Assembly (NCBI GenBank): GCA_010909165.1 | Contig: MU008186.1 | Location: forward strand, 434,001-498,000 | Source of the DNA: Anthoceros angustus | Lineage: Eukaryota; Plantae; Anthocerotophyta | Length of the DNA stretch: 64,000 nt | Direction of reading: 5' to 3' | Part shown: in pieces, positions 11,965-52,168 of the stretch | Position numbering within the stretch: position 1 is the first letter of the stretch | How the letters are laid out: the number at the start of each line of letters is the position of its first letter | The notes under the pieces: model-generated | Databases searched by the model: none | The model's input: the letters and a program-made list of their open reading frames with translations, nothing else | What the model was told of the DNA's origin: nothing | Program-made: the position numbers and the translations under genes

Positions 11965-13323
11965 ATGACGTGCCAAACAACAACTATCCCACAATTTGGA
12001 GACCAGACCACGGCTGATGTAATTCTGAAACTTATACCGTTAGAAAATGATGGACTACCGGTTGCCCCTTTGTTTTTGCACTCCACAGTCTTGCGACGTT
12101 GTGAATTTTTTGAAGCACGTCTTTCTTTGCGTTGGAGTGTAGGTAGTGTTTCATGTTCACAACCTTTGGAGCTAACACTTGATAAATGTAAGAACCCTGA
12201 TGTGTATGTGCGATGTATTCATTTATTGTATCTTCCAAATAAAATTAAATCTAATTTTTTTAGTGATGTACAAGATGTGCTTAATATACTAGAAGTGGCA
12301 GCCGAGCTTTTGTTTCATGAATGCATTGATGCATGTATGAAATATTTGGATTCAATACCGTGGAATGCAGAAAATGAAACAAATATTCGAACTTTATTCA
12401 CCTCCCTTCACATCAAGCCTACATCAGATCTTGCTGCAAGGCTTAGTGTTTTTGAAGATGTACCCAATTTTAAACCAGCGGATATTATGAAAGATATCCT
12501 TGGAGAGTTGCTGACACTGGTTACAAATGGTGCTCCACTAAAAACTCGAAATATTACACGAAAAATTTTACTTGGGAATGTGATGTCATCAAGTTCCCCT
12601 TCATTTGCAATAGTAAATGAAACAATCTTATTAAAAGAGCTTCAAAGAAACATAGAGCAGTTGAAAGTTCAACTCCGTAAATTTGCAAACTTTTTTACTT
12701 GGAACTCTCATCAAGTTACTTTATCATGTTCTACAATCCAATGGCTCTTAGAGGAAATGTTCACACTACAATTTGCAGATATAGCAATACAAATACTAGG
12801 AGAAGAGCAGGAATTGGCAGAACTCATGGTGTGTAGAATCTATCAAAACCCTTTTACAGAAACGTTATTTTTCATACTACTGCGTGTGCTCCAAGCACTA
12901 CAGGATGGAAATGCTATTGCACCTAAAGCTATCCGACTATCTCTTCTTACTACTTGGCTACCTGTGATGGCTAAACTTGGTAATGATGGTGATGACAATT
13001 TTAGGAAGAAAAATGATTTGCAACAAGATTTGGAGAGAGGATTAAATGCATTAGTCCAAACATTACCAATCATTGATCAAGAAAATATTTTCAAGATTTG
13101 GATAACTTCTTGCCTTAGTAGTAGAAGAGCGTGGCCAGACTTAAGTCAAGTATTTGACGTTTGGTGTGATAAGCTACGTGAAGCACAAAGAACAAAAGAC
13201 AATAATTCCTCATTAGGCAACACGAATGCAGATATTTCTTGTGTTGAAATAAACGTCGAAAAGAATGTGCAGATGGCATGTCTTGAAAAAAAGATTGAGG
13301 GAACCGAGAGTCATCCTTTATAA
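11965..13323 (+). CDS. BTB/POZ-domain protein (plant At3g50780/At1g63850-like class), intronless, 452 aa
   Basis: FGDQTTADVILKL...LFLHSTVL..CEFFEARLS.RW; ILEVAAELLFHECIDACMKYLDSIPW; RLSLLTTWLP; TLPIIDQENIF..W; WPDLSQVFDVWC. Confidence 0.9.
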   Translation: MTCQTTTIPQFGDQTTADVILKLIPLENDGLPVAPLFLHSTVLRRCEFFEARLSLRWSVGSVSCSQPLELTLDKCKNPDVYVRCIHLLYLPNKIKSNFFSDVQDVLNILEVAAELLFHECIDACMKYLDSIPWNAENETNIRTLFTSLHIKPTSDLAARLSVFEDVPNFKPADIMKDILGELLTLVTNGAPLKTRNITRKILLGNVMSSSSPSFAIVNETILLKELQRNIEQLKVQLRKFANFFTWNSHQVTLSCSTIQWLLEEMFTLQFADIAIQILGEEQELAELMVCRIYQNPFTETLFFILLRVLQALQDGNAIAPKAIRLSLLTTWLPVMAKLGNDGDDNFRKKNDLQQDLERGLNALVQTLPIIDQENIFKIWITSCLSSRRAWPDLSQVFDVWCDKLREAQRTKDNNSSLGNTNADISCVEINVEKNVQMACLEKKIEGTESHPL

Positions 13324-15249: not shown

Positions 15250-18200
15250 TCAGACAGAGCCCACTTGAGGGCACACCATAACAGACTTCCCTGGCAGAAG
15301 GGGACTTCGCTGCTCTTGTCGACCTCCACCCTGCTTCAGTTCAACATTATGCTCTGCATCACCAACTACCAACACAGTTTTTTCTGCTGATGAAGGGGCA
15401 GGTTTCAGAGGCCCTTTCACAATATCCACAAGTTTTCCACTGCCCTCCTGCTCGGCGGCTTCCAATTTGGCAATCTCATCCGGAAAGTTCAGACGAGCTC
15501 CTCTTCCACACTTCCTATACACCATCTTATCATAAGCACGTGCTGCCACCTCTGGAGAATCAAAAATTCCAATATAGATGTGCTTCCTTGTTTTCGGCTC
15601 ATACATCTTCACCTTGAAACGTCCACTTGGTGTGACCTGCACACCTACATAGGGAGATTTGCTTGGCTTAGGAGTGAGGGACAAGTTGCTATAACTATCT
15701 TTTCCCTTACTGGCTGGTCCTTCGTTTTGGCAAGACGTCCTTGAGTCTGTTCGCACCTCCGGTGTGTCGTCAAGAGATTGGTGGCTGTCTTTCCCTCTCT
15801 CTGACATCGCCCGCCGCTTAGATGTTGTCTTGTACACCTTCGCATACTGAGAATCCACATAATAATCACCATCAACAACAAAAGCTTGCCTTAATGCTCT
15901 TTGTGATCCTTTCCCTGATCCTGATGCTGACCCCCGCCTCTTGTCAGAAACCTTCGTCTTTTCACAGCTCTCTCTGCTACTTGGTCTAGGGGTATTTCCA
16001 CTGGGCTTCTTGGTTAATTTTGCCACCTCTGTAGGAGAGCAGTCTAATGAATGCCCGACTAAGCACTTATCATCGTTACCCTGTGTAGGGATTACAGCCT
16101 CCAATGCTGCCCCATGATCTCCTGATTCCTTTTCTTCTACAGCTGAACTAGGCAGTGAACAACCGCCCTCCATCTCCCTCTCAGAGGCCATCTGGGCATT
16201 ATCTCCTGACCCACTGCCTGACAAGTGTTCTGCCAACCACGATGGAATCTGGTCCTGTTCCTTGTTCTTTTCTTTCTTACCCTTATCCTTGGAGGACTGT
16301 GAAATGTAGGACATCTCCTGCGAGCTGGTAGCACTTGCTGCGTTATCTGTTAATGTCTTCTCACTTCCTGATATACCATGCCCTTCACTTGAACTCTCAT
16401 CCTGCATGCCATTTGTTCTCAAGGAACCTGACTTTTCACTATTGGTGACCTGTCCTTGAGAAATTCCATCCTCAGAACGTCGATCTTCTGTGGCTTCATG
16501 ACTATGGTGATCGTTTCCCTCCCTAAGGCATTGGCTGCCATGATGTCGTTCATCAGAAAAGACCCCAGCATTTAGTGTCGACTCATCCCCAACTTTCAGA
16601 TGTGAAGCTAAGATGGCCGATGTTTGCTTCACACCAGACAAGTTGACCTCCACCTGATTTACACTAACCTCGTATCTTGGTGTTGAGCTCAGTAGCACAT
16701 ATTTTTCTGACACCAGACAACTTTCACTGCTGTTAACCTTGGCTCCTCTGACACTAGTTGTACCCAGCTTTGCCACTCCATTCGTACACTCTGCTACATC
16801 ATCTTGCACCGCGAGCAAACCATCAGCAGATTCCTCCTCCCTGCTTGAAAATTTAGAGCAGAGACCCCCTGTTGCTGGAACATCTGTGACCAACTGATCC
16901 ACCATGGTTCTCACAGGGTCGGGGACACAAACAATACCTTTGAACCTAGTCTGTTCCTCAGGTACGTTAAGGTCTTCGCCATCTGCTGGTGTCCTATGTG
17001 GAGAACAAGGACTAGAATGTTGGGAGCCAAGCTTTCCACATCCGCCATTTTCATTATTCCTGAGTTGTATATCCGCTCCAGTTTGGCTGAAATCAGCTCT
17101 CAAGATCACTTGTGAATCTCCATTCATTTCTTGCACAATCTCCTTCAGCCCATGCACAGTTGAATTCAATGTCTGCACTTCACTTGGATGATTTTCGTCA
17201 CCCTGGGTTGAGTACGCTCCCTTGTCAAAAGCTTCAACAGGAGCAGTGTTCGGATCTCCATTATTCTGTGGCTGGTCCTCCACAAGTAAGGAACAGCCAG
17301 GGGATACAACAATCTTATTCACCTTGCTAGCCATGCTAACTGAAATATCATCTACACTTGACGAGTTCAACGACTTCCGCTTCCTGGACACGTCTTGCGG
17401 AGTAACGGAGAACTCATTACACAGTTCAGTTGCTTGGGAACCGGCCACACCACCTGTTTCCACTGTAGATGGTAAAGAATCATCTTCTGACTCCTCCCTG
17501 ACAAAATTGGTCTTAGCTCTCTTGCCCCGAAACATGCGTGCCGCATCATCATAGGCATGTGCAGCTGCTTCTTCGGTGTCAAATGTTCCCAGCCATAACC
17601 GCTTTCCATCTGGAGTTCGGATTTCTGCGCCAAAAGCACCCCATGGCCTCTTTCGTACACCAACAAACTTAGAGAAAAAGATACGCCTACCATGACTTTT
17701 CCCTGTTGTTGATAGTTCCTTTAGAGAAGAGATAGCTTTCTTCATTGCTGAGAATTTATTTTCATGTACTGAGCACAGTAAACTCATGGTTGTCATATCC
17801 AGGCCTCCAATGTCGATGATGGATGGAAGGTGAATTTGGTGCTGGTTTACCTTAGACACCGTCCCCTTTACCTGTGATAAATAGGGCAAACATGCCAGGC
17901 CCACTCTAGTCAAATCCATTGAGCCAATGTCTACACAGCAAGGAACCGAAAGAGGCCCACCATGCTTCCTTTTGTCTAGTGAAAGTGTGATCCCAGGATA
18001 TTCTGTTCTATGCTGTGCTGTTCGCAGTGGCGAAACTGCACAAGCCTTGTTAGTAATACAAGGTGTAACCATTGTGCAATTTTCCACACTTGCAGCTGCC
18101 GATTGCTTTTCTTGAGGGCCCTTGGCTACTAGAGACCCAGGTGCTCTCCTTTGCGATTTTTCCCCATTTGAATATGGCATGTTTTTGCCTCTGCAAAGTG

Positions 18201-21200
18201 TGAGCATCTTTTTCCTGGCTGAAGACAGCACATCCAGGTCGGGGCGGTTCCCCACCTGCTTGACCTCTGCATGTTCCTCATGTGGGGCTTCAGCACACCG
18301 ACTTTGATGATCTGGGGGCAGGGCTTGTGGTGCCGCTTGATTCACAAGCTGCCTCCCAGGAGGATCAAACTGCATAATGACTGGAGCGTCAACCACCTCA
18401 ACATGGTGAGCCACTGTTGCAGCCAAAACCATCAGCGTATATTCACCACTCGCATTCTTCTCTGGATGCTGGGGTTTTGATGTAACTGGCTGGGATGTCA
18501 CATTGGCGGGAACCTTATGCATCTGACAGAATCTGCAACATACAAGCACACAGACAGTGTCAGAGAGTAAGCATAACCTTGAGAAACAATCCATGCAGGG
18601 TAGACAGCGCTGACTTGGCTCCTCTGGACATTCAAACCCGTTTTGGAGGTGATGACTGTAAAAACTTGACTCCGGGAAGAACTACTCATGCAGCGTCCCA
18701 CAATTCCTCAACAAAAGCCAAGAGACTTGTGAAATAACCAGTGTGCATTTACCCTTGCGTACAGACGAAGGGCCTGGCCAAGGATACCATCAGTTTGGAC
18801 ACTGTTCAAAGGTCTTCAGAAGTAGCAGAAACAGACCTGGTGTCCCGAGTGCTCAGGAATACAGAAAACTTGCAACGGCCTTGTGTAGAGTGGTCAATAT
18901 ATTCACATTGTCTGTACGGAGCAGAAGAGTCCTCCAGGATATGCTGCATGCAGAACTCGTAGCCATGCACAGCATACTGCAGGCATCTTTGCTTGTCTGA
19001 CTGACAGAAAAGGGTGCCATTGGGGGAAGACAATTTATGCCCTCCCTTAAACTGGACTCGGAAGCTGTTGGGATTATAGGAACGCAGGTGAAATCCTTCA
19101 TTCCCTGCAGATTTGACAAGGTCATTTGAAGGACTGCATCTTGTCCCATTCAAGCTATCCTTTGCTTTATCACTTTCGTTTGCTGCTGGCAAACACTTGG
19201 CGCTTTGTTGACTATAATGGGCACCAACTTCAGCTTTTGCTGTCGTGAGCATATTCACATCAGTCCTCTTCTGAGCCTTCCTTGATTTCTTCCAGCCGAG
19301 AGGTTGGCCTCGGCTCTCTTCAAAATCATCCGACCTCTCCTCTTTTGAGCAACCCAATTCGGTTTCAATAAATTTGCGCTTGCGTCCAGAGTTTTCATTA
19401 TTTAGGAGCAGACTTGCAATCGACTCTGAAGGTGTGTCGGTTTCCAAAGAATATTCTACCTGCATGGTGTTTCACAATAAGCTTCAGTTGACAAAATTCT
19501 GCAGGGAAAACTCTTCCAGCACCACTCAGCTTTGAGATGAGACCTATCTCACCTCCTGCGAGTGGGTACCCTTCATCTTGTTCCGGGAGAGAAACCTGAC
19601 CTTGAACAGGTCAGCTGATATGATTTCAAAGAGTAATACATCACCAATTTCTCCATCATGGTGCCCGACAAAAGCTGGCCATCCATTTGTGAGTGCAAGT
19701 CTGCGCCCAGATTGCTCCCAGGCACTCCAATCAGTCTTCCATCTGCAGCCCTGTGAGTCCTCAAGAGTAACCTGCCCCTTTGATCCTTGGAGGAAAGTAG
19801 ACATGAACATGACGGGGAAGCACTGCAGCAGGACGATGCTGTTAGCATTCAGATTGGAAACCAGGAAAGGTGGTCAGCTTGTACGCTTCATGACACACAG
19901 GATGTGTCTAAAACTTCATAAAAAAGCAGAGCTGAGCGAAAGACATTTACCAATTTTCCATTAGGACCGATTGATCTGCGCTGGAGAGCCCTTGCAAAAG
20001 AAGGACTCTTGGTAACAACATCTCGGACAAGCCTCGTGACCATCTTTCTGTTTGGGCTAAGGCGCCCTTCCCCAATGTAGGGGACATAACCTTGTTTGCA
20101 AACCCTTGGCAAGTCTGTTTTCAAACGACGATTACCACCCACGGATGCCTTCACTTGATAGGGTTTCTCATTTACGCCCTGGAAATGCAATGTGCACAAG
20201 AATCCACTTAGCCCTTCTTGATGACACTGTGAAAATGCTGCCTCGCTCGAAATCAACGTTTTTTAGAGTCAATATTGTCAAGGAAGCATACAGTGACCAC
20301 AAGGAGATCTGCAAAATACCCTTGTCTTTTTAGCAGGAAGCGACCAGCCCTGTCTTGTCCAATTCAGATGCAACCTTGTGCGCAGGTCATCTGTCAAATC
20401 AATTTTCCTCGAGCCATGGCAAGATGAGACCTGCTTCATATCCACAGACCCAAAATGAGCACCTGCTTACCCTAACACATCTCCAGCCGCATCGTCTTTG
20501 GGCATTCAGTTTAATCGGAGCCTTACCAAAACCTTCTTCCTCCCAGAATCCAAAACAATCCGCCCTGGCCACCAGCAGTTATCTGTGTGTACGTCCACGA
20601 GATCACCGGCCTCCCATTCCTCTTTCAGCAGCCTCACCTTCCTGGGAACTCCATCGCGGGACACAGACATGATCTCATCTGGAGGCTTGGGTCGAATAGA
20701 TGGGTTGTGATAACCATCCTTGGAGTCATAACCAGAATCTTCATGTGTGATCCACTCACTAGCTGCCGAGCCAGGAGCACAGACAGTTAGATGCACTCGC
20801 AGATTCTGAGACGACCGTACACAGATTTACATAAAGTCAAACACCTCCCATCACAACAGCGTGTGCCCACATGCATAAATATCAACGAACAGTTCACAAC
20901 ACCCTGTTAACGAAAAGCACCCAGCTTGACAAACAAGTGAAATGAAGACTCACGCTCGTCTGGAACACAGGGGTAGCACACGTAATACCGGACTTCCTTC
21001 TGCCTGTCCACTTTCAAAACCTGCGTAGTACCCACCACAAACGAGGTCAACCACCCGCCAAGCTGAGTACACACAAACACACACACAGTACTTAGACAAA
21101 ACAACCCAGAGACACAAGATTCCGCATAGCATCCAGGCCGCTCACAACAACCCAACTCCAGTTCCACACCGATCACGCACCTTGGCATCCACCCAGACCT

Positions 21201-21276
21201 TCCGATTCTCATTCTCGCAACTGATCTGCACCAAGTCCCCCGAGCCGAAACACGAACTCCCAGGCGCATCCCCCAT
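15250..21276 (-). CDS. Multi-domain nuclear protein, ~1637 aa: Agenet/Tudor x2, B3, zf-C3Hc3H, AP2/ERF x2. Exons 21276-21181, 21020-20954, 20762-20527, 20430-20320, 20178-19951, 19822-19553, 19459-18837, 18532-15250
   Basis: All 7 introns are GT-AG and keep frame (4914 nt total). Agenet: [20 protein letters not shown] and [27 protein letters not shown]3: [40 protein letters not shown]3H pair: [22 protein letters not shown]2: [33 protein letters not shown] and [24 protein letters not shown]. Confidence 0.85.
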
Positions 21277-22765
21277 TCTTGCTCGGGCCCCCAGCCCAGC
21301 CCACCACCCTGCCTGCCTTACGTGCCGGCCATGCGTCTCCCACGGGTAGGTATACGACGTCGCAAAATCGGACAGTGGGCGGTAACCGAAACTCCCGTTT
21401 TCTCTGCGGCGGCGTCAAAATCAAATAAGGCTGCTACAGGCCCACAAAATCTTGGCCTGCAATTACTGCCGCCTGCAGCCAGCCTTGGCGCATTCCGCAC
21501 TCCACTTCCCTCCCCCTTCCTCCTCCGCGCGGACGACAGGACCGATATCCCTAACCCACCCGTCGTAGCTTTCCTCCCGTGCTTGCCTTTCCTTTCCTTT
21601 CCTTTCCTTCCCTTTCCTTGCCGTCCCCGCCTCACTCACGGATCAAACCCCGCCCATCATCCACCTGCATCCCGCACCCCAACATTGCACCACGAAGAAA
21701 CCCGGCAATTGCTGCAATACCCGAATTCCCGGAACCCGTATCTTGCCGCGGATCCGCGACCTGGCGCATTCCCCCGGGCCTGGCCCTGTCCCGGCACCGG
21801 GATTCTGTTCCTCTGTTCACGGCCGCAATTAGCACACCACAGTCAGCTCACGTAAGCCACAAATCCAGGTTACCACTTCCACGTGCACGTCGCAGCCGCC
21901 TAAATTTCGAACGGCGCGACCAGCCCGATCGCAAATTTGAGCTAGACGCGAGCCCGGACCCGCGATTTGCCTTTGCTGCTGCCCGTCTCCGCGCTCCAAG
22001 TTTGCATCATTCCCTCCATCCACATGCATGACATGGAAGTCCGGCGCGGCAGCCCGGCCCCGGCCCGCCCGCCGGAGAAGCTGCTGCGGCTGCTGCTGCA
22101 ACGGCCATGGCCGCGGCAACGGCAAAACGGGAAGGAGAGGCAGACGACGCTCTTGCCGGGACAAGGAAAAGGAGATGGCGATACAGCGCACACGACAATA
22201 GTATGGCGATGTCGATGCCGCGCTGTGCAGGCTTGGCTTGGCCTGGCCTGGCCTGGCCCGGCCTGGCTGTGTGTGTCTGCGTGCGCTGCGAGGCCTCCCA
22301 CCACGGCCGACCGACGCCCTGCTTGTTAATAAATGTCCTTCGTCGTCGCCGTTGTCGTTAGGTGTCCCACCGACTCTGCTCTGCTACGTACATAGTTACA
22401 TACTCTGCGCTCTACTATGTTTCTTTTAGCGCGGGTCAGTGAAAATTGGCAATTGGCTCTGGCTGCGTCATTTGAACCCGACATCGGGGGCCTTGTGGCG
22501 GTTGCCGGTGAGAAGGAAAAACCCGTGGGTTTCACTGGCAACGCGCCCCGCCCCCGTTTCATGCTCCTCGGCTGCCCCGGCCGCGATGTACGTAGTAGTC
22601 GCTCCGACGACGCCCTAATGTGCGTTCGTGGAAGAAGAAGAAGAAGCTGGCTTTGTACGCTGCTTGTGAGAAAGACGACGATGGAAGACGAAGCTGGCTT
22701 TGCTAGCTGCTTGTAAACAAACCAAAGAGGATGGAAGAGTGAGATGTGAAGGAAGGAAAGGGGGG

Positions 22766-24850
22766 ATGGTGGAGCCGAAAATGGCAGATGCGACGAAGGG
22801 GATGGTGAAGGTGGAGCACAAACTTACCGTGAGGGACATGGTGCAGGATGTGGTGAGGATGTTCAGGGAGCAGCCGGAGAAGAAGAAGCCGAAGCACAGA
22901 GATTTTCTGGAGGTGATGGCGTGCTTCCACATTCGAGCCGCGATGCTGGAGCACAAGAGGTTCGGGGAGGACATGAGCGCGGCGGACTATGATGTGCTGC
23001 TTGCTGTGTGCGTGGAGCATCTGATGATGAACAATTGTCCTGCGGAAGAGACGATCCAATTGCAAGTGACAGTGCAAGGAGCGATGTTTGTGGAGACGAA
23101 TCACATGAAGAAAGACACGGAAGCCAAGAAGGCGAGATTGCAAGCGATCTTGGACGAGATAGTGGACACTAAGGTGAGGGACATCAGGAGGAGGTTGGAG
23201 ACGGCGGACCGGCTCTACTTCCTGGTGGTGGACTACATGCTGGAGTCGAGCCGGCAGATGGACGACGTCAAGGAACTGGATCCGCAGACGGAGGCGGAGA
23301 TTTACGCGGCGCTGGAGAGCGTGTTTCCGAAGTCGGGATGTCTGCATTTCATGGAGATTCCGAAGCTTGAGAAGGTGCAGCAGATCGAGGAGATCTCTGA
23401 ACTGGTGCCGGGGATCCGGTGCTTCAACAAGCATCTCGGGAGAGGAGGCGCGGTGACGGAGTACCTGTTTGATCTGTTCGAGCAGGAGACGGACGCGCTT
23501 GCGACGCAGGTGGCTGACACGCTCCGGGACCTGCACGACAGACTGGACGACTACATCACGGCCTTGGACCTGCAGCGCGGCGACCTAGGCATGCACCATG
23601 TGCTCATCATCCGGCTGCGGGACGAGATGGCGTACCATCTTCAGGCTGCGGCCTTCGTGGAGACCTTGGACGGGATGGTGAATTCGCGGTACGAATTGGT
23701 GAACGGGCTCTGGGGAGAGTGCCAGCAGCATCTGAGCCAGCTTCAGGACAGCATCAACTCGCTCAAGATCGTCCCGACCGAGATGGTGTACCCTGCCTTC
23801 ATCGCCGTCGGTCGCATCCACAAGCAGATTTCGGAGGAGCGCAAGACGCTGCATGCACACGCCCGGGCGGGGGCGCATTTGCTCAGTATGACCAACAAGC
23901 CGCCGTTCGTGCTCACTCCAACCACATGGAAGAAGCTCATGCTGAGGATTAAGAACTTCGAGTTCATTCCCTACAAGGTGGAGTTTCATGATGTCCCGGG
24001 GCGGGATGAGGATGCTCCTCCTGCGCCTCAGAAGGCCATGGTGATCAAGGAGGCCAACATCCAGGACGTGCTGCTGCGGGGGACGGAAATCAAGTTCGCA
24101 GGGTACTGTCCGGTGACGCTCACCACGACGGACGGGCTGCTGCTGCACGGCAACCCGGACATGGGCTTGGTGCAGGTGGATGACGTGCTAGTGGCATGCT
24201 ACGATGAGGATGCGTTCTCCGGCTTTTACAAGGGATTCGGGAACTACATGAAGGAGGCTTACCGGCTGGTGAAGAGGATGCCGCAGCTGGTACACATTCT
24301 GGGGTTGCAGGCCACGCCGCCCTTCACGAGCCTTTCCATCCCTGAGATTTTGCAGACCCTGACGGAGCCCCTCCCGAGCGAGTTCGGCACGCAGACGGAT
24401 GTGCACATGTACGAGGAGCATAGGTGGGATGAGGAGACGCTGCATCTGCGCAAGCTGCAGCTGGCCAGCAAGCTCACGCACGGGACGCAGACGGAGGCGA
24501 GCCATTTCAGGCGGGACAGTGAGACGCAGATGTGGCTGCCTAAGGAGAAGTGGACTCAGGGAGGGAAGTCCAGGGGCACTTCCATGTTCAGGAGGGTGAG
24601 GTTTATGCAGAACCTTATCGGGCAGCCCAAGCAGAAGTTCTACATGGTGAACATCACCTACGAGCTTGGAGACACACCCAAGTTGTCGCTCCACAAAGGC
24701 CTCTCATCTTACTCCAAGAAGGGGACCAGGCCCGCGGGTCCTGAGAGGAGCGGCCAGGCATTCTCCTTCAAGCACGGTCACTACCCGCATTGGTATCAGC
24801 CTGTCTTTCACCCTGTCAAGGAACATAGAGCATCCAACGCTTTCTTCTGA
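22766..24850 (+). CDS. CFAP206: Cilia- and flagella-associated protein 206, intronless (start at 22766 or 22781)
   Basis: EIYAALESVFP, L..GIR.FNK, FAGYCPVTL...DGLLLHGNP.MG, TQTDVH, THGTQT..SHFRRDSETQMWLPK are the CFAP206 family signatures. Confidence 0.92.
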   Translation: MVEPKMADATKGMVKVEHKLTVRDMVQDVVRMFREQPEKKKPKHRDFLEVMACFHIRAAMLEHKRFGEDMSAADYDVLLAVCVEHLMMNNCPAEETIQLQVTVQGAMFVETNHMKKDTEAKKARLQAILDEIVDTKVRDIRRRLETADRLYFLVVDYMLESSRQMDDVKELDPQTEAEIYAALESVFPKSGCLHFMEIPKLEKVQQIEEISELVPGIRCFNKHLGRGGAVTEYLFDLFEQETDALATQVADTLRDLHDRLDDYITALDLQRGDLGMHHVLIIRLRDEMAYHLQAAAFVETLDGMVNSRYELVNGLWGECQQHLSQLQDSINSLKIVPTEMVYPAFIAVGRIHKQISEERKTLHAHARAGAHLLSMTNKPPFVLTPTTWKKLMLRIKNFEFIPYKVEFHDVPGRDEDAPPAPQKAMVIKEANIQDVLLRGTEIKFAGYCPVTLTTTDGLLLHGNPDMGLVQVDDVLVACYDEDAFSGFYKGFGNYMKEAYRLVKRMPQLVHILGLQATPPFTSLSIPEILQTLTEPLPSEFGTQTDVHMYEEHRWDEETLHLRKLQLASKLTHGTQTEASHFRRDSETQMWLPKEKWTQGGKSRGTSMFRRVRFMQNLIGQPKQKFYMVNITYELGDTPKLSLHKGLSSYSKKGTRPAGPERSGQAFSFKHGHYPHWYQPVFHPVKEHRASNAFF

Positions 24851-34788: not shown

Positions 34789-35427
34789 TGTGGGCTATGC
34801 ACTTCCCTGGGGAGTTAGGAAATAAGTAGGGTTTCTGTTTTTTTTAGGATTGAAGGATAAATAAGGCGGAAAAGGAGGAATAAATTGGGGTAGGCCCGGA
34901 CGAGGCTCGGAGTATACTCCGGACTGAGTGAACAACGGACCCCGCATCACTATGGCAAGCTCCGACTACCGGAGTAACGGATAAGTCCGAACCCACCCGT
35001 GTCAAAATAGGATAAGTACGCCAGGAAAGTAACCTAGGAGCGAGGCGTGAGGATGACGAGGCGGCGCCACGGACGGCCCCGAGTGGAGGTCGGGCATGCA
35101 GAGGCCAGACAGAATTTTGCCGTAGGCCGCAGGCAGTATTCACGCCCGCTGCCGCGCGGCGTAAGGCCGCAGGAAGCGAGGGTCGAGTAAGCCATGCACT
35201 CGCGCTACGGACAACGAAGAGGCGCCTTCCGCCAGAAGCCATTTCCACAAGCGCGCCAAGGAGGGAGGCTGCCGCGCAGCCTCCGCATACAATCCTCACA
35301 GCCTTGCGCCCGCAATCCGCTCGCGCTCGGGCGCGCCGCCAGAGCGCGCATCAGGTTGGAGCAACGCGCGGCGAAGGAGGAACATCGTGCCACGACTCGC
35401 CAGAAAGAACAAGAGGAGGAGAAAGCA

Positions 35428-38119
35428 ATGGCACCCAAAAGCCGACGGAAGTCTGGGAGCCATGGACCGTGGAGCGCAACATTGTGACCCGCGCTATCCG
35501 GACTTCGGGCCCCGGCCGGAGGAAGCAGGGAATTGGTGGGGGAGTGGCATCCGGACGTGTTCCAAATGGTCGGACCTTTGACAACGCTACTCTAGTCCGG
35601 AGTTTGCCCGGAAGATGCCGGCGATCAACAAGGAGGTCCGATCCAAGAACCTCCGGAGGACTCGAGGCGATGGACCTTGAGGTCCCGAGGATGGCCTACA
35701 ACCGCCCAAGGAGGAAGAAGGGGCGTGGTGCCGAGCCCTTAAGGCGAAGGGAAGATAGGGCCACGCGCGCCGCTGAGGCTCGAACGCAATGGACAACCAA
35801 CGGATGGTTGATATCCGATCCGCCGGATACCGAGTAAGGGCGGTAGCCCGGATCATTGTCCATTGAACTCGCCACCAAGGTGGATCACCTTGGTGATAAC
35901 CGCTATTCTCGCATGCGCCCAATGGGAAGAGAGCGACTGGGAAGGATTATCTTCGCCCGGTTGATCGGGAGCACGCAAGCTAAGGAGCGAGAAGCCTCGC
36001 CATCGGTGACCCCATACCGATTCATGTATGGGGACATTTCGAGCTCAAGGAGGAGAGCTTGAGCGGGCGCCCAAGGGCCGGAGGCCCCGCCAAGTAGAGC
36101 GTGCAAGGGCGCCTGAGGTGGGGGTCGCCCTTCAAGACCAAGCGAGGAGGAGGACGAGGATTCCTGACTCCATACGTCGAGCGAACCCCTCACCACCCAG
36201 TGGAAGTTTGGGAGGCGATTCCCTTCCTCCTTTTGGTGCCCTCCGAGCAAGCCGTGAGGGAGCCGATGCCGGAGGGCGTTGGCGGCCCGCACGGCCAATG
36301 CCAACAACCACGACGGCCGCCGAGCCCCGACGAACCCGGGCGGAGCAAGAGGCGGAAGACGGTGCCGCTTACCAACGCAGACCAAGGTGCCAGACTTACC
36401 CCGCCCACGAGTGGCAAGAGGTCAAGAGGCGAAGGAGGGCGAAGGGACGTGGCCCAAGGAGCAGGAGGTCACCGTGCCCCCACCCCGAGCCCCTGCCCCG
36501 ACAGTGAAGGGGCAAAAGAGCTTGCTCCCGACCCCTCACCTCCTCCGAGCCCTGTGAGAAAGAGGGCACAAAGGAGTTAGAGGCCAAGAGGCCAAGAGGG
36601 TGAGACTGACCACCACTGTGACCCGAGGGTCCCGATTAGGTCCGAGAACCCACCGACTTACTCCGGATCAAGGGTATGGAGGTCCTTGGCGGATCGAGAA
36701 ATGCCGGCCCCACTACGGACTTTGTGGGGCCTCACTGTGGCCGTGGAAGAAACACGGCGAGTCCTGCCACATGGACGGAATGCTTTGGGGTCTCGTGGTA
36801 CAATGAGAAGACCTGTGAAGTGGAGGCCACCCGAGGAGGATGGTGGAACCCAAGAGCAAGTGAAGGCGCCGAGGCAAAGGAAAAGGCGGAGTCCCTCGCC
36901 GGATCGAGGAAGGGAACGCCGGGTGGCGGAGCGAGGCCCGGTTCAACAGATCAAGGTTCTTCACCGTCACATAAGCAAGCTCAGAGGCCCAAGCGCGGAG
37001 GACCTTGCAGCGAAGAGGGAAGCGCAGCAGAGGCGGAAGAGGCCCGGCACAAGCAGAGAGCTCGGACCGCGGAGGCGGCCCGGCCAGAGCCAATGGGCGA
37101 GGCCTGTAAAGGCGGCGAAGGAGCTCAAGCCGCAAAGAGCGACCGGATCACTACAGACGTGATCGGAACCGTGGAGAGAGTCACAGTACCGAGGCTAACT
37201 CAAGGCCGCAAAGGCCATGGAGCAGTAAGGGCCAAGACGGGAGATAGAGGATCTCCGAGTGCACAGGAGGTAGAAGGAGGCGCAGCAGATGGAGGATGAA
37301 GAAGGACACACTGGAGCTACAACCCAAGATGCGCTTGAGCAGCAGTGATTCTCAACGAGAGAATCCACGACTCGAGCACGAAACAGAGCCCCTCCGTCTC
37401 AAGACGGAGGAAAATCGGCGACTATCCAAGGAGTTGGACGCTGCTGCCGAGGAGGAGGAAGTCCGAGCCTGGACGGAGGTATCCGACCGCCTGAGAGGGA
37501 GTCATGAGCTAAAGGCCGTAATGAACGGGAGCGCGAGCACGAAGTGTAAAAGAAGCCGCCGTCCAAAGAAGGCGGAAGGGAACGCCGCGCTATGGCGGGT
37601 AAGCCGGGCAATGGAAAGGAAACGAGGGAGCCGAGCAGTGAGCAACAGGCATGCAGGAGGTGACCGAGGCCGCCTTGTAGCCTCGCGTGATACCCTGCCC
37701 ACCACAACTGGGAGAGGTGGCCCAACAAGCCGGCAAAAGACGCCTTTTAACACTTATGGCGGAGGGAGTATCGGCCCGCACACGTGGAAGAGGCAATTCA
37801 ACAAGTCGATTCGGACTTTGCCTATTACCACGCCGAGCTCTCAAGGCAGAAGCCTCCACGCCGCACGGGGACGGACTGGAAGGCTCAAGGAGATGAAGGC
37901 CACGGGGACAAAGACAGGACCCTAGTGGCCCTGCTTGGAGATGACGGAGCGGCGGAGAGGAGCAACCGAGGAGCAACGAGGAGCGATGCGATCGAGGTAA
38001 GCACCCCGCACCTCACCATGGAAGGAGGGCCAACGAAGGAGTCACGGGCGATCGAACAGCCGGAGGACTTCGAGGGAGAGCCACGGAGGAGTCCCGTGAG
38101 GGAGGAAACCTGGGCGTGA
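35428..38119 (+). other. Long, frameshift-broken coding frame inside the 5' LTR (second copy in the 3' LTR)
   Basis: Protein-like fragments run continuously from MAPK.. through NGWLISD, WITLVIT, DWGRIIFARL, TPY..MY and a charged, coiled-coil-like C-terminus to ..VREETWA*. Confidence 0.6.
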
Positions 38120-38290
38120 GTCCGGACTTTGTCCGGACCCCAGAGGAGGGACCAAGTCCGACCAAGTCCGGACCTCAAGTCCGGACTGAATAAGTCCGAC
38201 TCAAGTCCGGACTGAATAAGTCCGACCCCGAGGTCCGGACCAAGTCCGACCAAGTCCGGACCAAGTCCGGACTGAATAAGCCGACTTTCG
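38119..38290. repeat. Array of short AAGTCCG(G)AC(TGAAT) motifs in the LTR (second copy ~50385-50470)
   Basis: Read directly; copy number differs between the two LTRs. Confidence 0.85.
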
Positions 38291-39226
38291 GAGTCGAGAC
38301 AGACCTCGAGGACCGGCCGCAAGAAGGAGGAGCCCCTTCGACTTACGCTTAGGGGAGGGTGGCCCCACCGGGCCAAGGACCTGTGGAGGCCAGGGAGGAT
38401 GACGCCGTGGTAACGGCTGTCGACCGCCAGAGCCCAACCCGGCTGTGATTCCGGGAGAGGAGGGCCCGCCTCACGGATCATCCGATTGGGTGCACCACAA
38501 CCGCTGTGACGGGATTGACCACCCATTCCGAGGCGGGCCTGTGACCTTCCCACCTACAATGGAAGGAGATAGGGGAGAATAGGCCGATTAGGGTATACCG
38601 AGCTATCACCGTAATAGGGGTGTAATAAAGACGCCACCTTGGGCGCAGATAAGAGGGCCGAGGCCGCCTAGTAAAGCATCTTTCTCTTGGTGTTGATGCC
38701 GCTTGCACCTTTGTGAGTCTTCTTGCTAACGTGAGTCCCGAGTCACCGAAAGGTGCACGATACCCGGGAGATTGATCAAGGTCCCGTGACGACTTAACGC
38801 TGTGGTGTGTGCGGGGAAGGGTGAGGTGATCCGTGCCCGAGCCGCGTCCGACACCGAACGGACTGAACGCGTGAGCCGGAGGAACTCCGGAGGGTGTAGA
38901 GCCGGACGAGAGGCCCGCGAACGAGGAGGTCCGGATCACAGAACCGCCTTTTCTAAGATCAAGAGTGTAGCGTGAGAGGAGAGAGGAAAGGACCGATGCA
39001 AGGATGTATGTGAACGATACGGACGCGAACGGGTCCTTAACGCTTGGCCATACCGGCCCAGACGGTGAACGAGTAGTTAGGAGTATGTGTGTTGAGACCG
39101 AACGAGCGCTAAGGACGGTAAGAATCACCAAACGCAGAACGGGCCTATCATTCCCTTTGGGAACGGACTTCTTCCTACAACGACACGGATTGTGCGCCTA
39201 CCGCCATCAAGAAAAGTCCCGCCACA

Positions 39227-39245
39227 TTTTGGCGCTGCGGGGAAT
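39227..39245 (+). promoter_or_regulatory. Primer binding site
   Basis: TTTTGGCGCTGCGGGGAA immediately follows the 5' LTR and resembles the TGGCGCCGTTGCCGGGGA PBS of Athila-type elements. Confidence 0.75.
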
Positions 39246-39402
39246 GAAATCGGTCTGTGGTGCCGCAGTGCGCCCTTAGGAAGAGAAGGTAAGTGAATGC
39301 GTGAGTCGAGCGACGGTCAAGAGTGAACTGTCAGAGGATCGGACGTGGTCACCTCGCGTGCTCTCCGAGCCGTGAGAGGAGAGACGCCAAACCCAACGAG
39401 AG

Positions 39403-40970
39403 CACCGCCGATCGAGGAGGGAGAACGTGGTCGAATTGTCGACCAAGACGAGTACGGGTACGAGGGACGCCAACGGAAGAAGGTAGGACACCCACGCCTA
39501 ACCCATCGATGGCAGCCATGGCCCCTACCGACCAAACAAGCGACTCCATATTCGGAGGAAGAAGGAGCGGATGCGAGACCTTTGTGAGGACTTCATGTCC
39601 AAAGCCAACTTCAACGGAGAGGGAGTCGACGCACCATCCAATTTTCCAAGGGGTTCTCCGAGGACATGCTCAATGGTATCGGAGAAAGTACCGACCACCG
39701 GAGAATGCCCCACCCGCCTGCTTGAAGCTTTGAAAATGCCTTCTTAGAACGGTTTCGAGGGATCACCAGTGAGGGGTATGTATTATCAAAGTTGGAAAAT
39801 CAAGCGAGGAAGAAGGAGAAGCCGGGCTCAGACATCGAGCGGTTCTATGCCCGAGGGATCGCATCCAACCCATACCACGATGCAAGCGGACGGTGGTTCG
39901 CGCTCTAGCCAAACCCATGGCTGCACCGCCGATCGAGGAGGGAGAACGTGGTCGAATTGTCGACCAAGACGAGTACGGGTACGAGGGACGCCAACGGAAG
40001 AAGGTAGGACCCACGCCTAACCCATCGATGGCAGCCATGGCCCCTACCTCGACCAAACAAGCGACTCCATATTCGGAGGAAGAAGGAGCGGATGCGAGAC
40101 CTTTGTGGAGGACTTCGTGTCCAAAGCCAACTTCAACGGAGAGGGTCGACACAGCTCATCCAAATTTTCCAAGGGGTTCTCCGAGGACATGCTCAATGGT
40201 ATCGGAGAAAGTACCGACCACCGGAGAATGCCCCACCCGCCTGCTTGAAGCTTTGAAAATGCCTTCTTAGAACGGTTTCGAGGGATCACCAGTGAGGGGT
40301 ATGTATTATCAAAGTTGGAAAATCAAGCGAGGAAGAAGGAGAAGCCGGGCTCAGACATCGAGCGGTTCTATGCCCGAGGGATCGCATCCAACCCATACCA
40401 CGATGCAAGCGGACGGTGGTTCGCGCTCTAGCCAAACCCATGGCTGCACCGCCGATCGAGGAGGGAGAACGTGGTCGAATTGTGACCAAGACGAGTACGG
40501 GTACGAGGGACGCCAACGGAAGAAGGTAGGATGCCCCACGCCTAACCCATCGATGGCGCAGCCATGGCCCCTACCGACCAAACAAGCGACTCCATATTCG
40601 GAGGAAGAAGGAGCGGATGCGAGACCTTTGTGGAGGACTTCATGTCCAAAGCCAACTTCAACGGAGAGGGAGTCGAGCCTCATCCAAATTTTCCAAGGGG
40701 TTCTCCGAGGACATGCTCAATGGTATCGGAGAAAGTACCGACCACGGAGAATGCCCCACCCGCCTGCTTGAAGCTTTGAAAATGCCTTCTTAGAACGGTT
40801 TCGAGGGATCGACCGTGAGGGGTATGTATTATCAAAGTTGGAAAATCAAGCGAGGAAGAAGGAGAAGCCGGGCTCAGACATCGAGCGGTTCTATGCCCGA
40901 GGATCGGCATCCAACCCATACCACGATGCAAGTGACGGTGGGCCGGTCTAGCCAAACCCATGGCTGTGCA
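39403..40970. repeat. Three tandem ~520-bp copies in the gag region
   Basis: Marker gtgaggggtatgtattatcaaagttgg recurs at ~39769, 40292 and 40815. Confidence 0.92.
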
Positions 40971-42479
40971 CGCCCCGCCGCCGAGAAGGACGTGGGCAAG
41001 GCGGTCGAGCGCCGAAAACTACGAGGAATCGCTACATCGAGGATAAAGAAATCCGCTCAAGGAGGCAAGAAGAAGAAGAAGAAACGGGTTCGATCGAGGA
41101 GGAAGAGTCTTCGTGAGGAGGAGGAAGACCAATCGGAGGTGTCTTGAGGAGGAAGAGTCTTCGAGGAGGAGGAAGACCAATCGGAGGTGTCTTGAGGAGG
41201 AGCAGTCCAAGAAGAGACGGAGGTCTCTAGCGAGGAAGAGTATCCCCGCAAGAAGAAGAGCAAGAAAGCCCCGCCAAAAGAAGTGGTAAGAAGGAGGTGG
41301 TGACACCAAGACCGTCCGAGAAGCTCCACGGACCCGACTCCCTCAAAGGAGGTAGCAGGTGTCCGGGAGGACCGGAAAAGTGATAAAGAGAGTAGAGGAC
41401 CGCGATAAACTGTGTTAAGGACCGAGAGCGGAAAACACCGACCACGGCGAACGATCGTGTGCCGTGCCAACACGCCATTCGAAGTCCAACCGCCTCAAGG
41501 CCGGTGCATCAAGTGGACTACGAATACGAGGAGGAGGCCGAGGAGCAATGGGAAGAGGCCTATCGTGTGAAGCCCTCCGGGCCGCGATATCCCAAAACCA
41601 TGTATCCGCCAACCGGAGGTCCGTCAATACAACGAGCCCCACCGATGCAAAGACCGCATGGGAGCCCCTTCGTATCCTCCGACGGCCGTGGTCCGTTGGA
41701 ACGGAATCCCGCCATTACTCCAACGCGTGTCCGCACTCCAACGAGGCAGGTGGTAATGGGGACTTCGAGCAGGTGGCGATCGCAAGGCCGGGCATATGAC
41801 AAAGACGCTATGTCCCAACCCCGCAAGGACGATATGCCACACCAAGCGGAGAACCCCGACCACCAACGCCACCTCCTAAGACTCACTGACGGCAAGTCAA
41901 GATGCTGGGCCATGGAGGAAGAGATTCCCAGTGCGAGATGGAAAAGAACAAGAAGGTACGGGGTGTCGAAAGGAAGGGAGTTGGAGTGGAAAATCTTGAG
42001 GTGTCTACTCAGAAGGAAGGAGCGACGAGAAAGGCGCCATTGAAGAAGAACAAGTGGAGGCCACGGACCGAGGAAGGCAATCAAACCAAATACCAGCAGA
42101 GGATCCGACCGATGAAGGAGGGCTGACGGGCAGCCTCCGAGGGATTACCCAAGGAAGTTCTCCCAGATGTGACAGGAGAAGGGAACGGTGCCTCCGCGAC
42201 GTTAGCTTCCACGGACGAGTCCGGAGGTGACCGAGATGTTGCAGGAGGAAATGCGCAAGCATCCGGAGAATACCGTAACACGGTGACCGGGAGAGGATGA
42301 GGACGCAGCAGGATCCTCGATTGGGGTAGAAGCCTTTAATGTGGCGACCGATGATGAATCAGACCTTGTGTCCTTTCGACACCGAGGGATAACCCAAATA
42401 CCGCAAGAGGTCCGGCCGTTAGGGGAAACCCACCGGCGGAGCACCAAAGCCGTGAAGGGTAGCATGGAAGTGAGGGTGG

Positions 42480-45400
42480 TGTCCCATACGACCTGGGGCG
42501 CCAGTGGTACAAGTGGAGATTGGATGTATCATCAAGGATGTACTGCTGGACACGGGTCCGAGTCAACCTCATCACCAAGCCACGCACGAAAATTGGGCTT
42601 CACATCCTTCAACCTCAACGAAGACTCGAGAATGGCGTATATGTCAAGAAGAGATCCGCGGGAGTTAACCGAGTCTTGGCCACCATAGCCGCGGCACCTA
42701 CAAACCGGATTTTGTTGTGATCAAACCGCCGGACCATTAGGGTATGAGGTGTTGTCGCCATGGTCGGGTTGGCCTGCAAGCTACACTTTGGAAGGAAGGA
42801 GATTCACTTCAAGCCGGTGGACCGGGACCCTAAGGTGCGAGAAGGGAGGGTTGCTATCACCGGAGCAAGGACACCTATTGTGGGAAACCGTGAGCACTAC
42901 CGAAGGGTATACCTCGTGGAGGACTCCAGCGGAACAAGATAGTTCCGAGGAGGCGACTTTCGCCAAGATCCGCCGGGTCCGAGGAGGAGATGGACCATCA
43001 TGGATGCCTTTGGTGCGGAAGTGATTGATTGTTTTGAGTAAACGCCACAACGGGCCGGAGGAAGGAAGTGAAGAGGAGGTCGGACCAAGACAAGGGGAGA
43101 CAACAAGAGTCGGACCAAGGAAAAGCGACATCAAGGAGTAACACGATTCACCTCCGACGAGCTCTTGAGAGAATGGGGATGCGAGAGGACGATCCCGAGA
43201 GGAGGACGAGGGGTTTGGACGCAGCAAAGACGAACGGAGACGTGAACCCGGACGACGTGGAAGAAGTGGAGGTCCGCAAATTCTCAAGTTTAAGAAAGGC
43301 ATGCCTCCGGACCAAGGAAGGACTAAAGCCGGGGAGTTTTATGAGGTGTTCGCCTCAAGGTCACGACATGAAGGGCATTCAAGAAGTGGGAGAGCATAAG
43401 ATCGATTTGAAGCCGGAGCGGTGCGGTCGAATCCGACAATACAAGCTCAACCCCAAGTATTCGATCAAGGTGAAGGAGGTCCTTGATAAGTACCGGAGGC
43501 AGACATCATTTTCCCCATCATCCGAGTGGGTCGCTGATTGTGGTGGTTCCCAAGAAACAAGACAAATTCGGTATGCCAAGATTGGAGGAAGCTCAACGAG
43601 AAGAAGGACCACTTCCGATGCCATTCAGAGACGACATTTTGGACAAGGTGGACGGACTACTTACTCCTTCCGGATGGCTACTCCGGATACAACCAATTGC
43701 ACCTAAGGGAGCGACCGGGACAAGACGACCTTCACTACGGAGTGGGGTACGCTTGCCTACAAGAGAAGTGCCTTTGGGATGACCGAGCGCTGTGGTCGCT
43801 CATGCGATGGTGACCAACGCCTTCCGTGACTTCGAGGGACTTCATGGAGATATTCCCGGATGATTTTGTGTGCATGGGGAGCAGGACAAACACCTTGGGC
43901 ATCTAAGAAGGTGCTTGAGCGCCGGAGACTCAATTGAGCCTACACCCGAGAAATGCTACTTTGGAATGACGGAGGGAATCTTGTGACTGTGTCGGGTGGA
44001 ATCGAGGTGGACCAGACAAGGTCCGGTCATCCGCCTCCACACGAACCTAAAGGAGCCGAGAGGTTTCGGAATGGTGGGATACTACCGTTTATTAAGGACT
44101 TTGCAAGAGGGCTAAGTTGATGTATCATCAAGGAGGAGGTTTGGACCGTGTGAGCGAGAGGAGGCCTTCGGATTTACGTAACACCTTGGTAAGCGCACCG
44201 CCTAAGAGGACCGGATCGAGCAGAAATTTCATGTGTATGTAGATGTCCGCTTTTGCTATCGGAGTAGTGCCGAGCCGGACGGCGGCGGATTATCCCGATA
44301 CTACCGACACCACCCACGCGAACGAAAATACACAACTAAGCGCACGGGTATGGTATATGCCAAGAAATTCGACACTACCTACTACCCAAAGGAGTTTGTG
44401 TTCTATGTAGACCACTTCCGTCAAGCATCCGGTGAATAAGACGGACCGTCCGGACGGATAGCAAGGTGGATATTGTTGCTGCAGGAGTTCACGTCAAGTG
44501 GAAACAAGACAAGGGAGGCAAGACCAAAATGCGATTTCGCACGATTGAAAACAGAAGGTGTTGAGAGATCGTGAAGATGCGCTCCTGATGAGACATTGGT
44601 TGCCGCAGAAAAGTACAACCGAGGAGCCCACCGACCGAACCCCAAGCTACGAGAATCGCATTTTAGAAGCGGGAGGGTCTGCACGTCCGACCCACGAAGA
44701 AATAGAGCGGTACTGGGAATGGAGCTCAAAATCGACTCGTGATGAGGGAGGCATTCGTGCACTATGCTCGACCCTTCGTAATGTACAACGGTGTGTGTTC
44801 AAATTAGGGCCTGACGGAGTAGAACGAAGGTACTTGCAACCGCAGACAGAGCGGCCGCTGGGGGCACGACGAAGGATTGGGGGAGGACACTACGCAAGAC
44901 AGTCACCACCAAAAGATTTTGAAGCGGATACCGTGGCCAACAATGTATGGGGACACCCACCGCTTAGAAGAAGTGTGATGCTTGTCACGGATCGGAAGCC
45001 AACCCCGACGACACAGGGCCGCTAGTACCGATATTGGCACCGCACCTTCAAAAGTGGGTATTGACTTTGTTGGACCTATACCCCACGACAAGACACACAC
45101 AAAGGAGATACATCCCGTGGCAACGACCATCGCACTGTGGGTAGAGGCGGTATGACAAGAACGGACTCGCAAATACCGTGGCCAAATTCTGTGAGAACAT
45201 CATAACCCGCACGGATGTCCGCAGCTTGGTAAGTGATAGGGGAACCCATTTCCTTAATGATGTGGTGGCCGCCATGACGGAGTATTTCGCATCAATCATC
45301 GCAAGACGGCACCCTACAATCCTAAGGCCAATCGACAGAGAAGACAAATGGGCTCATCCGCAGGATCTCAATAAACTCACAATGAACTACGCCCATGATC

Positions 45401-45849
45401 GATACCAAGTCGCCATCCGCACTGTATGCCCGGACAGCAGAAGGTGACCACACAACGGACCCTTTACTTGACCTACGACACTCTCCGTAATGCCGAGAGT
45501 TTGAAGTGCCCACTTTTCGAGTAATGATGGAAGGAGACTCGTAAGAGGAAAGCCACCGAGCGACTCTTGGGGTTTGTGCAACATACAGAGGACAGGAAGA
45601 AGCTCACCAAGATGCAGCTGGTGCAAAACCAACAAAGATTTGGCACGATCGCCGATCGCGAATCGTGAGTATGTAAAGGAAGGGGACCGCCTCCTTTATG
45701 ATAGTCGCTACATGCATTTTCCGTGCAAACTTCACCGAGATGGATGGGTCCGCACTAAGTGGTGCAAGTATATGACAACGGGTCCGGCACCACGCCTAGA
45801 TGGAGAGCTGCCCACTGTAAACGGGTGGGTGAAGAAGTATCATGTTTAG
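42480..45849 (+). mobile_element. pol: protease, RT, RNase H and integrase; heavily frameshifted as assembled
   Basis: PR DVLLDTGS.VNL (~42540); RT VVVPKK, DWRKLN, DGYSGYNQ, KTTFTTEWG, MEIF(P)DD; RH FHVYVD, ERKYTT; INT GGHYA, GIDFVGP, LVSDRGTHF, LLYDSR..KLH..W, VNG.VKKY. Confidence 0.9.
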
Positions 45850-45870
45850 TGTTGGCGAGACGCCAATGAT

Positions 45871-45882
45871 GAGAAGGGAGTA
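45871..45882 (+). promoter_or_regulatory. Polypurine tract
   Basis: GAGAAGGGAG(TA) directly precedes the TGTGG of the 3' LTR. Confidence 0.85.
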
Positions 45883-51888: not shown

Positions 51889-52168
51889 GTTTGCCTTGCT
51901 TAAGCAAAGCAATGGTTTCTAAATGAGGTTCACGACTTATGGAAGAAGGTGCGCTTCCCGCTACAAAATGAAGTGAGTCACTAGGTTGAACGGCATGGTG
52001 AACGGGGTGTCCAAACAGACGTGAGAGATAAATTATTTACCGTAATAAAGTCTTAAAAAATATTACATGTCTATATACCATTGCTTAGAAGTTTTTGGGT
52101 CCGACATAAACAGACCCTGTCGGTAGCTACTAACACCTTTCACAAGTGAGAGAACTTGCCAAGTCACC

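What the first reader, a model, noticed from the sequence alone, without database searches (positions are those of the whole stretch)
15250..21276. One gene fusing 2x Agenet/Tudor, B3, zf-C3Hc3H and 2x AP2: a chromatin-reader and multi-DNA-binding composite
Seen: the ORF track splits this region into several unrelated pieces, but eight exons join through seven canonical, phase-compatible GT-AG introns into one ~1637-aa frame. Established: Agenet/Tudor domains read histone marks; B3 and AP2 are sequence-specific plant DNA-binding domains; zf-C3Hc3H occurs in KANSL2/INO80D-type chromatin-complex subunits. The familiar AP2+B3 family (RAV) has one AP2 followed by B3, and AP2-subfamily proteins have two closely linked AP2 repeats. 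Here B3 comes first and the AP2 domains are ~600 aa apart, with the second divergent (no WAAEIR). Inference: this is a lineage-specific regulator coupling histone-mark reading to DNA recognition, an architecture I do not recognise from described families.
Basis: partly seen in the sequence, partly recalled or inferred. Interest (0 to 1): 0.85.

Follow-up and report, generated by a model that had tools for sequence, protein, structure and literature searches.

The report
Known multi-domain plant transcription factor
This is a real, correctly spliced gene for a large DNA-binding regulator of a family already reported in liverworts, mosses and gymnosperms; this copy keeps two of the family's four AP2 DNA-binding repeats, and nobody has yet tested what the family does.

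Summary
Eight exons joined by seven GT-AG introns give 1637 aa, and all seven junctions lie on single spliced contigs in three organisms. Domain order: tandem Agenet, B3, zf-C3Hc3H, two AP2.

The novelty claim fails. Zhang et al. 2019 (PMC6781369) described this architecture as the TcA3Bz1 subgroup, including Marchantia PTQ32953.1 (MpAP2B3-2/MpREM3) with Agenet, B3, zf-C3Hc3H and three AP2. The window gene is its orthologue and shares all seven intron positions. It is not lineage-specific: members occur in liverworts, moss, a lycophyte, ferns and conifers.

First, the family has four distinct AP2 repeats (R1-R4), lost differently by lineage; this gene keeps R1 and R3. Second, the tandem Agenet has the ADCP1/AGDP1 fold but lacks most of its H3K9me2 cage, so histone-mark reading is unsupported.

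Best reading: a multi-site, sequence-specific transcription regulator. R1 is ERF-like; the B3 has its own conserved recognition loop. I found no functional test. The host is probably a hornwort (inferred).

The parts
21181..21276 (-). Exon 1 (ATG at 21276); start of Agenet repeat 1
   Evidence: 72% identical to L001 exon 1
20954..21020 (-). Exon 2; Agenet repeat 1 continued
20527..20762 (-). Exon 3; end of Agenet 1 (IRPKPP motif) and first half of Agenet 2 (D-V...W-W-P-G)
   Evidence: Pfam Agenet E 0.027; aligns to Marchantia and gymnosperm N-termini
20320..20430 (-). Exon 4; end of Agenet 2 (LR..L.W...W motif)
   Evidence: 77% identical to L001
19951..20178 (-). Exon 5; clade-specific motif before the B3 domain, and start of B3
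   Evidence: 55-63% identical to most family members
19553..19822 (-). Exon 6; B3 domain with recognition loop WEQSGRR
   Evidence: Pfam PF02362 E 1.4e-11; PDB hits TEM1/NGA1/RAV1; loop conserved
18837..19459 (-). Exon 7; basic/acidic linker and most of zf-C3Hc3H (from 19006)
   Evidence: Pfam PF13891 E 3.7e-11
15250..18532 (-). Exon 8 (3283 nt); last Cys/His of the zinc finger, clade motifs, both AP2 domains, stop at 15250
17746..17952 (-). Duplicated clade-specific (D/E)IG.(M/L)D motif upstream of AP2-R1; no Pfam or Atlas match
17500..17673 (-). AP2 repeat R1, ERF-like
   Evidence: PDB 1GCC E 2e-16; R1 clade 100/100
15840..17470 (-). Ser-rich, fast-evolving linker; the position where relatives carry AP2-R2, with no relic detectable here
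15481..15657 (-). AP2 repeat R3, divergent from ERF type
21277..22150 (-). Long 5' leader with many short upstream ORFs; the upper end is estimated from contig length and assumes no leader intron
   Evidence: contigs X1/X17 extend 770-811 nt beyond 21380; in-frame stops upstream of the ATG
21835..21914 (-). Conserved non-coding element with ACGT cores, shared with the L001 orthologue
   Evidence: 74% over 85 nt, E 1e-8

Best explanation
The gene is this plant's orthologue of the TcA3Bz1 / MpAP2B3-2 (MpREM3) family. The ancestral land-plant form carried tandem Agenet, B3, zf-C3Hc3H and four AP2 repeats; this copy keeps R1 and R3 (shown by sequence, tree and intron positions). It most likely works as a nuclear, sequence-specific transcription regulator that binds compound sites (inferred). 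AP2-R1 would read a GCC-box-like element; the B3, with its family-specific WEQSGRR loop, and AP2-R3 would read other motifs; long flexible linkers would let these sites lie far apart. The tandem Agenet and the zinc finger probably contact chromatin or partner proteins, but not through the ADCP1-type H3K9me2 cage (inferred from missing residues). Family membership is about 0.95; the mechanism is about 0.6.
For: One spliced transcript in three organisms. Domains. Same order in Marchantia, Riccia and Calypogeia. All 7 intron positions shared with Marchantia and L001. Repeat tree and repeat-specific HMMs place the two AP2 domains in R1 and R3. R1 keeps the Arg/Trp/Glu positions of AtERF1 in the 1GCC alignment (their DNA-contact role is from my own knowledge of that structure). 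B3 loop identical in the window, Marchantia, Riccia and Calypogeia. Selection: CDS indels in X8 are multiples of 3; Agenet exons 2-4 differ 2.2% from a relative versus 6.4% for exon 8, p = 2e-4. Marchantia orthologue listed among TFs up in antheridiophores and archegoniophores (PMC6174852 supplement).
Against: No DNA-binding, localisation or mutant data were found for any member. R1 has G/T at the positions that separate ERF (A/D) from DREB (V/E), so its exact site is uncertain. Physcomitrium members lack B3 and Agenet, and fern members lack Agenet, so these domains are dispensable in some lineages. No EAR or RLFG repression motif in exons 7-8.
Confidence: 0.65

Rival explanations
1. It is mainly a DNA-targeting subunit of a chromatin complex (NSL/MOF- or INO80-like), docking through zf-C3Hc3H as KANSL2/INO80D do, and not a stand-alone transcription factor.
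For: The zinc finger is PF13891 with all eight Cys/His ligands and is present in every lineage sampled. Its nearest Atlas clusters are KANSL2/NSL2, as a lead only (scores 0.84-0.85).
Against: Only the ~62-aa finger is shared with KANSL2; nothing else matched. No interaction data. This reading is compatible with the best explanation.
Confidence: 0.2
2. It reads H3K9me2 through its tandem Agenet as ADCP1/AGDP1 does and couples heterochromatin to DNA motifs.
For: The Marchantia N-terminus folds like the ADCP1/AGDP3 tandem Agenet (Foldseek E 2e-8; profile hits). The Agenet exons are the most conserved in the gene.
Against: The AGDP1 pocket is Tyr122, Trp127, Phe144 and Glu149 (PMC6208443). The window has Thr at the Tyr position, Trp kept, and no aromatic or acidic residue near the other two; liverworts also lack the Tyr and the Phe, and gymnosperms lack the Trp.
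Confidence: 0.1
3. The gene is decaying, as suggested by loss of two AP2 repeats and a degenerate cage.
For: R2 and R4 are absent from all six frames of the window. Of 40 listed changes, nearly all outside the AP2 domain, 23 are non-synonymous.
Against: Open frame over 1637 codons; in-frame indels in a relative; spliced contigs in three organisms; strong conservation of the folded domains. Repeat loss is common in this family.
Confidence: 0.03
4. The pieces are separate genes, as the ORF track suggests.
For: Automatic gene calling splits the L001 orthologue into B3, zinc-finger and AP2 pieces. An AATAAA lies at 17760.
Against: Single contigs carry all junctions. The zinc finger is completed only across intron 7. 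Full-length annotated orthologues exist.
Confidence: 0.01

Closest known systems
TcA3Bz1 subgroup of AP2/EREBP (Zhang et al. 2019, PMC6781369): Taxus TcA3Bz1, Ginkgo Gb_05581, Marchantia PTQ32953.1 = Mapoly0093s0032 = MpAP2B3-2/MpREM3, Physcomitrium Pp3c11_13860 and Pp3c7_17700
   Same: Order Agenet - B3 - zf-C3Hc3H - widely spaced AP2 repeats; clade-specific B3 and finger; all seven intron positions shared with Marchantia.
   Different: Two AP2 repeats (R1, R3), not the three in the paper's definition. Marchantia has R1+R3+R4, Cryptomeria R1+R2+R4, and Riccia, Calypogeia, Diphasiastrum and one Physcomitrium copy all four. 1637 aa versus 2171 aa in Marchantia.
RAV family (AP2 + B3; RAV1, TEM1, MpRAV)
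   Same: B3 and AP2 in one chain; RAV-type B3 domains are the nearest solved structures.
   Different: B3 comes first; the loop is WEQSGRR, not WNSSQS; no RLFG motif in exons 7-8; Marchantia has a separate RAV gene, Mapoly0072s0102.
ADCP1/AGDP1 and AGDP3 tandem-Agenet H3K9me2 readers
   Same: Tandem Agenet fold and motifs.
   Different: One pair only; the methyl-lysine cage is mostly absent; fused to DNA-binding domains.
Auxin response factors (B3 inside a double Tudor-like domain; PMC11685440)
   Same: A precedent for a Tudor-type pair joined to B3 in a plant transcription factor, where the cage proved dispensable.
   Different: In ARFs the B3 is inserted into a PHIP-derived Tudor pair; here it follows an Agenet pair. 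No PB1 domain.
KANSL2 / INO80D zf-C3Hc3H proteins
   Same: PF13891 double C3H finger.
   Different: No other shared region detected.

Membership tests
TcA3Bz1 / MpAP2B3-2 clade | B3 domain N-terminal to the AP2 repeats, of the clade's own type | tested here: met
   49-58% to members; WEQSGRR loop
TcA3Bz1 / MpAP2B3-2 clade | zf-C3Hc3H between B3 and the AP2 repeats | tested here: met
TcA3Bz1 / MpAP2B3-2 clade | Three AP2 domains (the paper's wording) | tested here: not met
   Only R1 and R3. The count is not a stable family trait: orthologues carry 1 to 4. Membership is filed on orthology, not on this count.
TcA3Bz1 / MpAP2B3-2 clade | AP2 repeats fall in the clade's repeat-specific groups | tested here: met
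   First AP2 in the R1 group (100/100); second in the R3 group (97/75)
TcA3Bz1 / MpAP2B3-2 clade | N-terminal Agenet as in Marchantia PTQ32953.1 | tested here: met
   Exons 1 and 3 align to Marchantia residues 17-134; Marchantia has two Agenet stretches, 42.4 bits
TcA3Bz1 / MpAP2B3-2 clade | Orthology by shared gene structure | tested here: met
   Seven intron positions match Marchantia and L001
RAV | AP2 before B3; WNSSQS loop; RLFG repression motif | tested here: not met
   (motif scan covered exons 7-8)
AP2 subfamily (AP2/ANT/WRI) | Two closely linked AP2 repeats of the AP2 type | tested here: not met
   Repeats about 610 aa apart; R1 groups with ERFs, apart from the algal double-AP2 proteins
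ADCP1/AGDP1-type H3K9me2 readers | Tandem Agenet fold | tested here: met
   Tested on the Marchantia orthologue, mapped to the window exon by exon
ADCP1/AGDP1-type H3K9me2 readers | Tyr/Trp/Phe cage plus Glu in the second Agenet | tested here: not met
   (by sequence offset from the conserved Trp, not by superposition)
ADCP1/AGDP1-type H3K9me2 readers | Measured binding to H3K9me2 peptide | not testable with these tools
   needs ITC or a peptide array
KANSL2/INO80D complex subunits | Stable membership of an NSL or INO80 complex | not testable with these tools
   needs affinity purification

The most novel reading that the evidence does not exclude
The family is an ancestral land-plant regulator, apparently lost in flowering plants, in which a tandem Agenet with a rebuilt pocket reads a ligand other than H3K9me2 and the KANSL2-type finger brings an acetyltransferase or remodelling complex to compound DNA sites. 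Lineage-wise loss of AP2 repeats R2-R4 would then have rewired its targets, for example in reproductive structures.
Probability: 0.2. Interest if true: 0.65.

Novelty: new member of a known kind. Interest (0 to 1): 0.3.

Why it matters
The gene itself is an expected orthologue. The family is still a gap: it is found across non-flowering land plants, has unusually many DNA- and chromatin-type domains, and has no functional study that I could find. Marchantia's copy (MpREM3) makes it directly testable. The four-repeat ancestor with different losses per lineage corrects the published 'three AP2' picture: the middle repeat of Marchantia (R3) is not the same repeat as the middle one of conifers (R2).

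Tried and rejected
Relic of AP2-R2 in the linker: I saw a faint look-alike by eye near exon-8 residues 625-675, but the R2 profile gave no hit and the best local score (25) was below the shuffle mean (30), so it was rejected. A hidden downstream exon with R4: none in six frames of the window. Direct Agenet detection in window exons 1, 2 and 4, and a PDB search with exon 3: nothing significant, because the exons are short. PDB search with the zinc finger: no solved relative. Atlas search with the DIG motifs: no usable hit. Synteny of the BTB and CFAP206 neighbours with L001-L003: none seen in the DNA held. Exact look-up of window proteins to place the organism: not in the collection. Paper searches for a functional study under TcA3Bz1, MpREM3, MpAP2B3, gene ids or 'four AP2 domains': only PMC6781369 and a gene list.
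Full report
Observation. The minus strand holds eight exons (21276-21181, 21020-20954, 20762-20527, 20430-20320, 20178-19951, 19822-19553, 19459-18837, 18532-15250). They total 4914 nt, or 1637 codons plus stop, and all seven introns (93-304 nt) are GT-AG and phase-compatible. The frame upstream of the ATG is closed by stops. Contigs laid on 15400-21380 skip exactly these introns in run X1 (same organism, no mismatches) and in X8 and X17 (two relatives, about 94% identical), each on one contig from exon 1 to the second AP2. The runs are labelled RNA only as a guess, but precise removal of seven introns shows spliced transcripts. Contigs do not prove a single molecule; long reads would. Coding indels in X8 are all multiples of three.

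Domains. Pfam finds B3 in exon 6, zf-C3Hc3H in exon 7 and two AP2 domains in exon 8. The last Cys and His of the finger lie in exon 8, so the domain is complete only after splicing. Agenet scores weakly in the window (exon 3, E 0.027). The matching N-terminus of the Marchantia orthologue has two Agenet stretches above cut-off, and its predicted fold (mean pLDDT 65) matches the tandem Agenet of ADCP1/AGDP1 and AGDP3 best (E 2e-8). Window exons 1 and 3 align to that region.

What it is. The architecture is published. Zhang et al. 2019 (PMC6781369) named a subgroup after Taxus TcA3Bz1 (B3, zf-C3Hc3H, three AP2), with Ginkgo Gb_05581, Physcomitrium members without B3, and Marchantia PTQ32953.1, which also has an N-terminal Agenet; they report none in angiosperms or Selaginella and no function. 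PTQ32953.1 was among my top hits. It is Mapoly0093s0032, named MpAP2B3-2/MpREM3 and listed among factors up in antheridiophores and archegoniophores (PMC6174852 supplement). The Marchantia gene shares all seven intron positions with the window gene and has two more. Further members came from Marchantia paleacea, Riccia, Calypogeia, Physcomitrium, Diphasiastrum, Ceratopteris, Adiantum and Cryptomeria. I found no angiosperm or algal member; the named angiosperm hits I checked were tandem ERF-type proteins. These searches were not exhaustive. The closest relative, L001 from an unnamed sample, has the same eight exons at 44-82% identity.

Host. The window gene and L001 form their own branch, apart from liverworts, the lycophyte, ferns and conifers. 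With short introns and a CFAP206 flagellar gene next door, a hornwort is my inference; it was not shown.

What is different here. Repeat-specific profiles and a tree sort the family's AP2 domains into four groups, R1-R4 (support is full for R1 and moderate for the others). Riccia, Calypogeia, Diphasiastrum and one Physcomitrium copy keep all four. Marchantia keeps R1, R3, R4; Cryptomeria R1, R2, R4; ferns R1 with or without R4; L001 R1, R2, R3; the window gene R1 and R3. So the ancestor most simply had tandem Agenet, B3, finger and four AP2 repeats, and lineages lost different repeats. The linker where R2 sits in L001 has the same length here (about 365 aa between anchors) but no detectable relic, which suggests decay in place. 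No R2 or R4 exists in any frame of the window.

How it most likely works. R1 aligns to AtERF1 (1GCC) and keeps the Arg, Trp and Glu positions that contact the GCC box (their role is from my knowledge of that structure). R3 has replaced most of them but is conserved: the one listed change within it is synonymous (the table of changes was truncated), so it probably binds something else. The B3 loop reads WEQSGRR against WNSSQS in RAV proteins and is identical in the liverworts sampled, which points to a conserved specificity of its own. I infer a transcription regulator that binds compound sites through several domains on long flexible linkers.

The histone-reading claim. In AGDP1 the H3K9me2 pocket is Tyr122, Trp127, Phe144 and Glu149 of the second Agenet (PMC6208443). 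Counting from the conserved Trp, the window has Thr for the Tyr and no aromatic or acidic residue near the last two; liverworts also lack the Tyr and Phe, and gymnosperms lack the Trp. Yet exons 2-4 are the most conserved part of the gene (2.2% versus 6.4% in exon 8, p = 2e-4). The pair is therefore functional but probably not an ADCP1-type reader. ARFs give a precedent: their Tudor-like domain is essential while its cage is not (PMC11685440). The zinc finger resembles KANSL2 (lead only), which leaves open a link to a chromatin complex.

Verdict. A real, intact, transcribed gene, and a new member of a described but untested family. It misses the paper's literal 'three AP2' criterion, but that count varies from one to four among orthologues, so I file it by orthology. 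Interest 0.3.

Noticed in passing
window 21835-21914 (-): About 85 bp of non-coding DNA with ACGT/G-box-like cores is 74% identical to L001:159-242, upstream of the orthologue (E 1e-8); it lies in or near the long 5' leader.
   Followed up: partly
window 21277-22150 (-): The 5' leader appears to be about 870 nt long and holds 14 upstream ATGs with short ORFs (4-66 codons); L001 also has many upstream ATGs, with no obvious shared peptide.
   Followed up: partly
L002:872-5113: The sample that gave L001 also holds a divergent paralogue with zf-C3Hc3H and six AP2 repeats, including two R2-like ones; no B3 or Agenet in the 870 nt held upstream.
   Followed up: partly
window 22766-24850 (+): An apparently intronless CFAP206/FAP206 flagellar gene (PF12018, E 1e-27) lies head to head with this gene.
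   Followed up: partly
window 11965-13323 (+): Single-ORF BTB/POZ plus ankyrin-like protein of 452 aa (PF25553) downstream, tail to tail.
   Followed up: partly
window 18388-18447 and 17746-17952 (-): Family-specific motifs GE(Y/F)TL.VLAAT.A..VEV and a duplicated (D/E)IG.(M/L)D have no Pfam match; the second also has no Atlas match.
   Followed up: partly
P0005 and P0006 (Physcomitrium): Two similar Physcomitrium proteins differ in carrying R2 (R1+R3+R4 versus R1-R4), which may reflect alternative splicing of a repeat.
   Followed up: no
window 35000-52000: GC-rich stretch with strong A-over-T skew, matching an earlier unchecked note of a Gypsy element at 34789-51476.
   Followed up: no
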